NCBI RefSeq assembly: GCF_006345805.1
Contig: NW_021825840.1
Coordinates: 1-14,146, forward strand
Origin: Octopus sinensis
Taxonomy: Eukaryota
DNA length: 14,146 nt
Reading direction: 5' to 3'
Of the stretch, positions 4,278 through 4,388 are shown one piece after another; within the stretch, counting starts at the first letter, position 1; each line of letters begins with the position of its first letter. The position numbers were made by a program, and so were the translations under genes. The notes beneath the pieces were generated by a model. It saw only the letters and a program-made list of their open reading frames with translations. It searched no databases and was not told the origin of the DNA.

Positions 4278-4388
4278 AAATTCCTTTATTTTATTTTCGA
4301 CATATGTTTCGAAGTCTGCAAAGTCCCTAATTCCGAATGAATAAGGAGTCCATTATGCAGCTTTCTCTTCAGGAAAATCCAGGAACTT
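4278..4388 (-). ncRNA. Type I hammerhead ribozyme (Penelope-like/retrozyme-type)
   Basis: Minus strand reads aagttcct gg attttc CTGAAGA gaaag ctgca...tgcag a cttc GAAA catatg TC gaaaat aaaataa aggaattt. All core nucleotides are present. Stem I is 6 bp perfect plus an 8-bp extension; stem II closes with G-C; stem III has a palindromic loop; GUC cleavage predicted between 4299 and 4298. Confidence 0.85.

What the first reader, a model, noticed from the sequence alone, without database searches (positions are those of the whole stretch)
4278..4388. Apparently intact Type I hammerhead ribozyme on the minus strand
Seen in sequence (minus strand): stem I attttc (4378-4373) / gaaaat (4298-4293); core CUGAAGA (4372-4366); stem II gaa(a)g/cttc then ctgca/tgcag, continuing into a further ~9-bp hairpin; GAAA (4310-4307); stem III AC-atat-GU inside the palindrome ACATATGT; cleavage triplet GUC with the scissile bond at 4299/4298. 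Stem I extends through a 2x7 internal loop into 8 more pairs (aagttcct/aggaattt). Established knowledge: this matches the hammerhead core consensus, and short palindromic stem III loops typify Penelope-like-element hammerheads that cleave as dimers. An internal loop in stem I is the partner of loop II in fast natural Type I hammerheads. Inference: this motif may combine the two architectures and could be an undescribed cephalopod variant.
Basis: partly seen in the sequence, partly recalled or inferred. Interest (0 to 1): 0.85.

Follow-up and report, generated by a model that had tools for sequence, protein, structure and literature searches.

The report
Solitary type I hammerhead motif, octopus
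The minus strand at 4278-4388 really does carry an intact-looking type I hammerhead ribozyme motif of the kind already known by the thousand in animal genomes; it is a lone copy in repeat-rich octopus DNA, and its only unusual trait is a very long second helix.

Summary
Rfam's Hammerhead_1 model matches 4378-4293(-) end to end at 31.0 bits (gathering 34; E=2.2e-6 in a 131-nt search). It was found only once the search was narrowed, because the 51-nt insertion in helix II makes Infernal's filters drop it. All 13 core positions, G10.1-C11.1 and C15.2-G16.2 are intact. Shuffles and Markov simulations make chance unlikely.

A 6-bp helix I with an internal loop, plus a 2-bp helix III capped by a palindromic tetraloop, is the classical metazoan or invertebrate type I architecture, not a new hybrid. 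Hammerhead_1 loci have already been counted in a cephalopod genome.

The window is octopus DNA, closest to O. sinensis of the two species sampled. The motif sits in a ~238-bp unique island between TA microsatellites. The window holds no second copy, no tandem array and no Penelope-like ORF. No paralog turned up in 127 kb of octopus DNA.

The most likely reading is a solo retrozyme or PLE-derived hammerhead that cleaves after C4299, weakly or as a dimer. Nearest-neighbour folding favours inactive alternative folds. I rate it a new member of a known kind, of low to moderate interest.

The parts
4381..4388 (-). Outer (distal) helix I, 5' strand AAGUUCCU
   Evidence: Pairs with 4278-4285 (8 bp, one G-U). 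Base-pair probability is 0.67-0.99 in the unconstrained ensemble.
4379..4380 (-). Internal loop of helix I, 5' side (GG)
   Evidence: Direct reading.
4373..4378 (-). Helix I proximal, 5' strand AUUUUC (2.6-2.1)
   Evidence: Six Watson-Crick pairs with 4293-4298. Aligned to helix I of Rfam RF00163. The in-register pairing probability is only 0.01 in the ensemble.
4366..4372 (-). Core box C3-A9, CUGAAGA
   Evidence: Exact match to CUGANGA.
4311..4365 (-). Helix II, 55 nt: G10.1-C11.1 plus 2 A-U pairs, two bulged A around one G-C, a 5-bp CUGCA/UGCAG, and a 35-nt distal hairpin
   Evidence: The Rfam alignment shows a 51-nt insertion where the model has about 10 nt. The distal 5 bp have probability 0.87-0.98 and the proximal pairs 0.07-0.45. 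The segment folds at -12.9 kcal/mol, z=-1.92.
4307..4310 (-). Core box G12 A13 A14 A15.1 (GAAA)
   Evidence: Exact.
4300..4307 (-). Helix III: A15.1-U16.1, C15.2-G16.2, loop AUAU. This is the 8-nt palindrome ACAUAUGU, able to form an intermolecular 8-bp helix III in a double hammerhead
   Evidence: Direct reading. The self-duplex energy is -7.0 kcal/mol.
4298..4299 (-). C17 (4299) and predicted scissile bond 4299/4298 (GUC|G)
   Evidence: Position follows from the alignment to RF00163. Cleavage itself was not tested.
4293..4298 (-). Helix I proximal, 3' strand GAAAAU (1.1-1.6)
4286..4292 (-). Internal loop of helix I, 3' side (AAAAUAA)
   Evidence: Direct reading.
4278..4285 (-). Outer helix I, 3' strand AGGAAUUU
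4247..4484 (-). ~238-bp unique, AT-rich (GC 0.34) island that carries the hammerhead. It is the candidate solo retroelement unit
   Evidence: Bounded by (TA)n 4128-4246 and (AT)8 4485-4500. The next block, 4502-4598, is a different repeat with a copy in O. sinensis L018 whose upstream flank is unrelated. The island has no paralog in the window or in 127 kb of octopus DNA.
4128..4246 (.). (TA)n microsatellite abutting the 3' side of the island (minus-strand sense)
   Evidence: TRF. AT-rich or (TA)n DNA is a reported preferred target of PLEs (PMC8557442; PMC11167929). In this microsatellite-dense DNA it is only circumstantial.

Best explanation
This is a genuine hammerhead ribozyme motif of the canonical metazoan type I class, present as one solitary copy in intergenic, repeat-dense octopus DNA. 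It is most probably a solo unit, or a 5'-truncated remnant, of a hammerhead-bearing retroelement: a non-LTR retrozyme or the pseudo-LTR of a Penelope-like element. It appears to have landed in a TA microsatellite. If the minus strand is transcribed, the RNA would fold helices I and II around the intact CUGAAGA/GAAA core and cleave itself after C4299 by in-line attack of the C17 2'-OH, leaving 2',3'-cyclic phosphate and 5'-OH ends. Helix III is only 2 bp plus a palindromic tetraloop, so efficient cleavage is expected to need two copies pairing through ACAUAUGU (a double hammerhead) or a protein helper. No tandem partner lies within 14 kb and alternative folds are more stable, so at this locus the motif is probably weakly active or silent. 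Shown: the motif, its statistical significance, its solitary state, the absence of a PLE ORF, and the octopus origin. Inferred: the retroelement origin, cleavage and dimer dependence.
For: All core and helix positions were verified, and this is the only descriptor hit in the window. The chance rate of the bare descriptor is about 0.0015 per window or about 6e-8 per nt. The extra conserved pairs G10.1-C11.1 and C15.2-G16.2 were never seen together in chance hits. Rfam RF00163 gives a full-length match at 31.0 bits, E=2.2e-6. Scaled linearly, that is roughly 0.01 expected in both strands of a 2.7-Gb genome for this one family. In identical 131-nt searches, an octopus sequence that merely satisfies the descriptor (L021 10708-10757) gets no hammerhead hit, and a bona fide oyster PLE min-hammerhead gets 15.7 bits. 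Of 17 pattern matches to core plus helix III in the metagenome and viral collections, none had both helices I and II. The architecture equals the canonical metazoan or invertebrate type I hammerhead (PMC4209133; PMC7229834). Most PLE-type hammerheads occur as single dispersed motifs, and solo retrozyme monomers are common (bioRxiv 10.64898/2026.07.22.740005). The island's size (238 bp) and GC (0.34) fit the retrozyme ranges of 150-450 bp and below 45-50%, and it is bracketed by TA repeats. Hammerhead_1 loci and Penelope elements are reported in cephalopods. A degenerate PLE (RT plus GIY-YIG) was found in O. bimaculoides L019.
Against: The score is 3 bits below Rfam's gathering threshold. No paralog, tandem copy or family could be found in the window, in 127 kb of octopus DNA, in metagenomes or genome contigs, or by the protein route. 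Membership of a repeat family is therefore unproven. There is no PLE ORF in the window (tblastn; Pfam). The hammerhead fold is 5 kcal/mol less stable than the MFE (-18.4 vs -23.3). The in-register helix I has probability 0.01, and a competing hairpin UUCGA/UCGAA sequesters G12, A13 and C17. An approximate double-hammerhead energy (-45) is worse than the dimer MFE (-54). The overall fold z-score is only -0.58. Helix II is far longer than in described canonical motifs, so the usual loop I-loop II contact is not evident. TA flanks are weak evidence in DNA this rich in microsatellites.
Confidence: 0.72

Rival explanations
1. Chance look-alike: AT-rich, repeat-laden DNA happens to satisfy the short hammerhead consensus, and the RNA was never a ribozyme.
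For: The motif is small. Perreault et al. 2011 warn that consensus matches occur by chance in large databases (PMC3088659). The bare descriptor would occur about 340 times in a 2.7-Gb genome (extrapolated). A descriptor-level chance match was in fact found in only about 60 kb of octopus DNA (L021). [quoted passage not shown] The fold is not unusually stable (z=-0.58), the active fold is disfavoured, and the score is below Rfam's gathering threshold.
Against: The 31.0-bit full-length CM match with zero bias is far above the chance control (no hit), and even above a real PLE min-hammerhead (15.7 bits). The conserved G10.1-C11.1 and C15.2-G16.2 pairs, the 8-bp outer helix I and the coaxial 5-bp extension of helix II are all extras not required by the descriptor. 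Combined, they bring the expectation to about 1 or fewer per genome.
Confidence: 0.1
2. Host-retained (domesticated) single-copy ribozyme with a lineage-specific helix II domain. On this reading the hammerhead is kept by selection at this locus, for example to process a non-coding transcript, and the 55-nt helix II serves as a regulatory or protein-binding arm. This would be analogous to the few conserved single-copy hammerheads of amniotes.
For: The core and all three helices are intact, although neighbouring repeats are 4-20% diverged from their paralogs. The copy is single, with no family found. Helix II is more structured than shuffles (z=-1.92). Isolated, conserved hammerheads exist in amniotes (mentioned in PMC7229834).
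Against: There is no conservation data at all. No gene or ORF lies nearby. Intactness is an ascertainment effect, since only intact motifs get flagged. The active fold is thermodynamically disfavoured. Only 127 kb of a ~2.7-Gb genome was sampled, so 'single copy' is unproven.
Confidence: 0.08
3. Active retrozyme or PLE copy that currently produces circular or processed RNA from this locus.
For: The core is intact and helix III is palindromic and dimer-competent. Retrozymes are abundantly expressed in other molluscs (mussel).
Against: Circular-RNA production needs at least two hammerheads flanking a unit. Only one is present in 14 kb, with no tandem repeat and no PLE ORF.
Confidence: 0.05

Closest known systems
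Canonical metazoan type I hammerhead ribozymes of non-LTR retrozymes and satellite repeats (newt satellite 2, Schistosoma Sm-alpha, cave cricket, coral, mussel, axolotl; Rfam RF00163 Hammerhead_1)
   Same: Type I topology. Identical 13-nt core. G10.1-C11.1 and C15.2-G16.2. GUC cleavage triplet. 6-bp helix I followed by an internal loop and a distal helix. Helix III of 2 bp plus a palindromic tetraloop, described as typical of invertebrates. AT-rich host sequence of a few hundred bp. Full-length 31-bit match to RF00163.
   Different: Helix II is 55 nt (interrupted, at least 9 bp, plus a 35-nt hairpin) instead of about 4 bp plus a 4-6 nt loop, so the archetypal loop I-loop II contact is not recognisable. 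The copy is solitary rather than in a 150-450 bp tandem array. The score falls 3 bits short of Rfam's gathering threshold. No family or circular RNA has been shown.
Minimal hammerheads (min-HHR) in the pseudo-LTRs of Penelope-like elements (Cervera & de la Pena 2014; Poseidon_Ac of Anolis, PMC11167929)
   Same: Mostly found as dispersed single motifs from truncated elements. Longer and sometimes bulged helix II (7-8 bp; a bulge in D. virilis). Palindromic 15.2-16.2 and loop 3 implying dimer action. Low intrinsic activity and possible protein assistance. AT-rich or (TA)n insertion preference.
   Different: No PLE ORF anywhere in the window. No unpaired nucleotide between A9 and 10.1. Helix I is long (6+8 bp), not 4-5 bp. 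The Rfam HH1 score (31 bits) is twice that of a real mollusc PLE min-hammerhead tested the same way (15.7 bits), so it resembles the canonical class more than the minimal class.
Isolated conserved hammerheads of amniotes (HH9/HH10 and the discontinuous 3'-UTR hammerheads)
   Same: Single-copy genomic occurrence with an enlarged helix.
   Different: Those are defined by deep sequence conservation and an intronic or UTR location. Neither can be assessed here, and no gene is nearby. This comparison rests on my own knowledge and a passing mention in PMC7229834.

Membership tests
Hammerhead ribozyme, type I (Rfam RF00163) | Conserved core C3 U4 G5 A6 N7 G8 A9 ... G12 A13 A14 A15.1 ... U16.1 H17 | tested here: met
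   CUGAAGA 4372-4366, GAAA 4310-4307, U4300, C4299.
Hammerhead ribozyme, type I (Rfam RF00163) | Three helices around the core, with helix I open-ended and helices II and III closed | tested here: met
   Helix I is 6 bp (plus 8 bp distal). Helix II is 3+1+5 bp plus a hairpin. Helix III is 2 bp plus a tetraloop.
Hammerhead ribozyme, type I (Rfam RF00163) | Most conserved non-core pairs G10.1-C11.1 and C15.2-G16.2 | tested here: met
   G4365-C4311 and C4306-G4301. Never seen together in 25 chance descriptor hits.
Hammerhead ribozyme, type I (Rfam RF00163) | Score at or above Rfam's curated gathering threshold (34 bits) | tested here: not met
   31.0 bits, E=2.2e-6 in a 131-nt search. The deficit is attributable to the 51-nt insertion in helix II. 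No hit at all in larger searches because of filters.
Hammerhead ribozyme, type I (Rfam RF00163) | Tertiary contact between the loop of helix II and the internal loop of helix I (needed for fast cleavage at physiological Mg2+) | tested here: inconclusive
   An internal loop exists in helix I (GG / AAAAUAA), but helix II has no loop at the canonical distance, only bulged A4362 and A4315. The mussel retrozyme hammerheads also lack the archetypal loop nucleotides.
Hammerhead ribozyme, type I (Rfam RF00163) | Site-specific Mg2+-dependent self-cleavage 3' of position 17 | not testable with these tools
   Needs in vitro transcription. Folding suggests the active fold is 5 kcal/mol above the MFE.
Non-LTR retrozyme (Cervera & de la Pena 2020) | Type I hammerhead with a weak helix III (1-2 bp plus a palindromic loop) | tested here: met
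   ACAUAUGU. Definition.
Non-LTR retrozyme (Cervera & de la Pena 2020) | Head-to-tail tandem repeats of ~150-450 bp, each with one hammerhead | tested here: not met
   One hammerhead only, and no direct repeat of the island in 14 kb. It could only be a 'solo' monomer.
Non-LTR retrozyme (Cervera & de la Pena 2020) | Low GC (below 45-50%), no LTR/PBS/PPT, unit of a few hundred bp | tested here: met
   Island of 238 bp, GC 0.34. No coding capacity.
Non-LTR retrozyme (Cervera & de la Pena 2020) | Multicopy family in the same genome, with covariation among copies | tested here: inconclusive
   No copy in 79 kb of O. sinensis plus 48 kb of O. bimaculoides. This only bounds the copy number at roughly below 1e5. 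The whole genome was not searchable.
Non-LTR retrozyme (Cervera & de la Pena 2020) | Expression as small circular RNA | not testable with these tools
   No transcriptome access.
Penelope-like element pseudo-LTR hammerhead | Located in the repeat flanking a PLE ORF (RT plus GIY-YIG) | tested here: not met
   tblastn of Poseidon_Ac protein against the window gives no hit at E<=10. No RVT or GIY-YIG Pfam hit in the minus-strand frames of 2400-5600 and 8600-12800. A truncated remnant cannot be excluded.
Penelope-like element pseudo-LTR hammerhead | Minimal architecture: helix III absent or minimal, an extra unpaired nt 5' of helix II, helix I of 4-5 bp, helix II of 7-8 bp | tested here: inconclusive
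   A long bulged helix II and a palindromic helix III are present. The extra nucleotide is absent and helix I is long. The score profile is closer to the canonical class (31 vs 15.7 bits).

The most novel reading that the evidence does not exclude
The motif may represent an overlooked class of octopus or cephalopod type I hammerheads in which loop II is replaced by a long structured arm (about 55 nt). Such a class would be systematically missed by standard pipelines, because Infernal's filters and the helix-length limits of RNAmotif descriptors drop it. It might be retained as a host ribozyme whose extra arm regulates folding or binds a protein.
Probability: 0.08. Interest if true: 0.5.

Novelty: new member of a known kind. 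Interest (0 to 1): 0.25.

Why it matters
Hammerhead ribozymes tied to retrozymes and Penelope-like elements are already known in most animal phyla, including molluscs, and Hammerhead_1 loci have been counted in a cephalopod genome. One more copy does not change the picture. Two things are mildly useful. First, it is a concrete example of a canonical-core hammerhead carrying a 51-nt insertion in helix II. If that RNA cleaves, it extends the tolerated architecture of type I motifs. Second, it shows a practical blind spot. The same sequence scores 31 bits with Rfam's model when searched alone, yet is silently filtered out in window-scale or genome-scale scans, so published hammerhead counts may under-report long-helix variants.

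Tried and rejected
1. Rfam at gathering threshold on the whole window, at E<=10 on 501 nt and at E<=5 on the whole window gave no hammerhead hit. The filters were the cause, and the hit was resolved by a 131-nt search.

2. Paralogs inside the window: the repeat finder, TRF and blastn with word size 7 found none.

3. Protein route to paralogs. The 40-aa ORF over the motif and two neighbouring ORFs are not on record. A search with the 48-aa open frame found no candidates.

4. Pattern scans of public collections. A strict pattern in metagenomes gave 0 hits. A relaxed pattern gave 12 hits, none homologous and none with both helices. The viral collection gave 5 hits without stems. The prokaryotic genome contigs gave 0.

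5. PLE context. Pfam on three-frame minus-strand translations of 2400-5600 and 8600-12800 found only a mariner fragment. tblastn with the Poseidon_Ac protein found nothing in the window.

6. Sampling octopus DNA through a mariner fossil and a PLE fossil yielded six octopus loci (127 kb) and one oyster locus. There was no paralog by blastn or by a single-sequence covariance model with filters off, and no Rfam gathering-level hit.

7. A literature search for the SINE sequence string found nothing. The supplements of PMC8557442 are not held.

8. I considered the metagenome family L001/L003-L006/L009/L011 as relatives and rejected it. They share only the searched pattern, without helices I and II, and have no Rfam hit.

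Full report
**Observation**

- Helix I is AUUUUC (4378-4373) paired with GAAAAU (4298-4293).
- The core box CUGAAGA is at 4372-4366.
- Helix II begins with G4365-C4311 and two A-U pairs. It then has a bulged A4362, G4361-C4314 and a bulged A4315, followed by CUGCA/UGCAG (4360-4356 / 4320-4316) closing a 35-nt distal hairpin.
- GAAA is at 4310-4307.
- Helix III is A4307-U4300 and C4306-G4301 with loop AUAU, so the segment ACAUAUGU is an 8-nt palindrome.
- C17 is 4299, which puts the scissile bond at 4299/4298.
- Beyond a 2x7 internal loop, helix I continues for eight more pairs (4388-4381 / 4285-4278, one G-U).

**Is it more than chance?**

A descriptor scan of both strands finds only this site. 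The descriptor required an exact core, helix I of at least 4 bp, helix II of at least 3 bp and helix III of at least 2 bp. In 3000 dinucleotide-preserving shuffles, a match with helix I of at least 6 bp appeared 4-5 times, about 0.0015 per window. In 2 x 40 Mb of first-order Markov sequence it appeared 2-3 times per 40 Mb.

That rate would give a few hundred bare-descriptor matches in a 2.7-Gb genome, so the descriptor alone proves nothing. None of the 25 relaxed chance hits also carried the two most conserved non-core pairs, G10.1-C11.1 and C15.2-G16.2, which the candidate has. Only 2 of the 25 had an outer helix I of at least 7 bp.

Rfam initially gave nothing: at gathering threshold, at E<=10 on 501 nt, or at E<=5 on the whole window. 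When only 4270-4400 was searched, which relaxes Infernal's filters, RF00163 Hammerhead_1 matched 4378-4293(-) over the whole model (1-45/45). The score was 31.0 bits, with bias 0.0 and E=2.2e-6, and the alignment showed a 51-nt insertion where the model expects about 10 nt in helix II. The curated gathering score is 34, so the match is formally sub-threshold.

Scaled linearly (my inference), the E-value corresponds to about 2e-4 for the whole window against all families. For this one family it corresponds to about 0.01 over both strands of a 2.7-Gb genome.

Two controls were run in identical 131-nt searches:

- An octopus sequence that merely satisfies my relaxed descriptor (L021 10708-10757) gets no hammerhead hit at E<=10.
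- A real mollusc PLE min-hammerhead (oyster L022 9322-9361, minus) gets 15.7 bits.

In addition, of 17 exact matches to 'core plus G10.1/C11.1 plus helix III' in the metagenome and viral collections, none had both helices I and II. I conclude that the motif is a real hammerhead-type sequence, not an accident, with roughly 90% confidence.

**Where it sits**

The window is eukaryotic, non-coding and saturated with microsatellites and interspersed repeats.

A frameshifted mariner transposase fossil (Pfam PF01359) has an Octopus sinensis protein as its best database relative (62% identity). About 25% of the window is covered by repeats shared with only 79 kb of O. sinensis DNA, at a mean of 84% identity and up to 96%. 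Fewer repeats are shared with 48 kb of O. bimaculoides DNA.

The hammerhead lies in a ~238-bp unique island (4247-4484, GC 0.34). The island is bracketed by (TA)n 4128-4246 on one side and (AT)8 4485-4500 on the other. The next block, 4502-4598, is a different repeat. Its O. sinensis copy (L018 14694-14792, 85% identity) has an unrelated sequence where the island would be.

The island has no second copy in the window, and there is no other hammerhead on either strand. tblastn with the Poseidon_Ac PLE protein, taken from the supplement of PMC11167929, finds nothing in the window. Pfam finds no RT or GIY-YIG in the minus-strand frames of 2400-5600 and 8600-12800.

**Search for relatives**

No eukaryotic genome could be searched directly. 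I tried four routes:

- The ORF/protein route.
- Four pattern scans of public collections.
- Indirect sampling of octopus DNA. The mariner fossil and a PLE fossil (L019, about 23600-25000, RT followed by GIY-YIG) served as handles. This gave six octopus loci (127 kb) and one oyster PLE locus.
- blastn, a single-sequence covariance model with filters off (best non-self 18.6 bits against 139.9 for self), and Rfam at gathering threshold over those loci.

None of these found a paralog. This bounds the copy number only loosely, at roughly below 1e5. It does show that the island is not one of the very abundant octopus repeats that litter the same loci.

**Structure and likely activity**

ViennaRNA gives an unconstrained MFE of -23.3 kcal/mol for 4392-4274, against -18.4 for the hammerhead-constrained fold. 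In the ensemble:

- The outer helix I (0.67-0.99) and the distal helix II (0.87-0.98) are robust.
- The in-register proximal helix I (0.01), the proximal helix II (0.07-0.45) and helix III (0.02-0.05) are not.

A competing hairpin, UUCGA (4313-4309) with UCGAA (4300-4296), buries G12, A13 and C17. The palindrome ACAUAUGU can form a -7 kcal/mol intermolecular helix III. Even so, an approximate double-hammerhead energy (-45) is still poorer than the dimer MFE (-54). The whole region is no more stable than shuffles (z=-0.58). Helix II alone is moderately so (z=-1.92).

Tertiary contacts are not modelled, and several natural animal hammerheads are weak as monomers, need dimers, or need a protein. 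This argues for low activity, not for none.

**Comparison with what is known**

Cervera & de la Pena 2014 define the canonical metazoan type I hammerhead as helix I of 6 bp and helix II of 4 bp with loop-loop contacts, plus a helix III of 1-2 bp capped by a 2-4 nt palindromic loop that forces dimer action. [quoted passage not shown] It places such hammerheads in AT-rich 150-450-bp tandem repeats, the non-LTR retrozymes, including about 5000 copies in a mussel.

PLE min-hammerheads have longer, sometimes bulged helix II and mostly occur as dispersed single motifs from truncated elements. PLEs prefer AT-rich or (TA)n targets. Solo retrozyme monomers are common, and retrozymes appear to derive from PLE pseudo-LTRs. 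The giant squid genome paper already reports 235 Hammerhead_1 loci and Penelope elements.

What does differ is helix II. At 55 nt in place of about 14, it removes the canonical loop II. It is also the reason standard scans miss the motif.

**Verdict**

The best explanation (confidence about 0.72) is a solitary, canonical-type type I hammerhead left by a retrozyme or PLE-type retroelement in a TA microsatellite. Its core is intact, but it is probably weakly active or silent at this locus because it has no tandem partner and competing folds are favoured.

The rivals are:

- Chance (about 0.10).
- A host-retained single-copy ribozyme with a novel helix II arm (about 0.08).
- An active circle-producing retrozyme at this locus (about 0.05, largely excluded by the single site).

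Novelty: a new member of a known kind. Interest is low to moderate (0.25). The main value is the filter blind spot for long-helix II hammerheads, together with the question of whether such an insertion is compatible with catalysis.

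Noticed in passing
window 13566-14137 (tandem, period 184, 2.6 copies); inverted copy 5122-5273; partial copy 11818-11941: A SINE-like repeat (GTTCTGAGTTCAAATTCCGCCGAGGTCGACTTTGC...) recurs many times in every O. sinensis locus sampled, at 84-96% identity. ARAGORN and Rfam do not recognise a tRNA head in it.
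   Followed up: partly
window 9159-9906 (-): Frameshifted mariner-type DNA transposon fossil (Pfam PF01359 Transposase_1, E=4e-12). Its best protein relative is an O. sinensis 'SETMAR-like' protein at 62% identity, and it is 81% identical at DNA level to L018 9952-10738.
   Followed up: yes
window 2679-3167: MITE-like element of ~489 bp with ~29-bp terminal inverted repeats (about 2683-2711 and 3139-3168). It has an internal 60-bp tandem duplication (2941-3062) and an interstitial telomere-like (TTAGGG)n tract on the + strand at about 2776-2807. Three copies at 85-89% identity occur in one 20-kb O. sinensis locus.
   Followed up: partly
window 4502-4598: A ~97-bp repeat next to the hammerhead island has an 85% copy at L018 14694-14792. 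In both loci it is followed directly by a microsatellite, which suggests a microsatellite-associated short repeat.
   Followed up: partly
window 4826-4901: Near-perfect inverted repeat or hairpin (ggaaaaatgccatgaaaaacttttcatagcatttttcc...) that draws weak miRNA-precursor-like Rfam hits (mir-5429, 35 bits, far below gathering).
   Followed up: no
window 6580-7700 and 12744-13380: Long G/T-rich triplet minisatellites (GGT/GAT-type, strong GC skew up to +0.75) that create long spurious ORFs on both strands.
   Followed up: no
window 11703-12487: Four dispersed or tandem-like copies (73-94% identity) of a ~96-bp unit (TATCGTCAGCCACCAAGGGACAT...), also present in the O. sinensis and O. bimaculoides loci.
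   Followed up: no
whole window vs 4270-4400: Methodological point: a 31-bit full-length Hammerhead_1 match is reported only when about 130 nt is searched. With 501 nt or 14 kb it vanishes, while microsatellites give miRNA-like 'hits' up to 55 bits with E=9e-9.
   Followed up: yes
L022 (Saccostrea cucullata) 9322-9361 (-) and 16691-16725 (+): Two PLE-associated minimal hammerheads share the palindromic helix III AGCGCU (GAAAGCGCUU). One lies inverted just upstream of a 593-aa RT plus GIY-YIG ORF and the other lies inside a second PLE gene range. Rfam HH1 gives only 15.7 bits for the first.
   Followed up: partly
L019 (O. bimaculoides) about 23600-25000 (+): Degenerate Penelope-like element with RT motifs followed by a C-terminal GIY-YIG (…LIYCIKCSNCEELYIGETG…), interrupted by several stops. 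Its closest intact relatives are oyster proteins (about 40% identity). No hammerhead was detected in its flanks.
   Followed up: partly
L001, L003-L006, L009, L011 (marine metagenome contigs): A conserved ~110-nt sequence family (…gcgccatatCTGAYGAG…GGCCTTGAATGGCGAAACATATGTCgtcag…) contains both hammerhead boxes but lacks helices I and II. It has no Rfam match, and its nature is unknown.
   Followed up: partly
L012 740-789 (+) (metagenome contig Ga0307984_1069078, GC 0.38): Possible type I hammerhead with a 7-bp helix I and the same helix III ACAUAUGU as the octopus motif, but an irregular 31-nt helix II region. It is unrelated in sequence, gets no Rfam gathering hit, and scores 14 bits with model R1.
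   Followed up: partly
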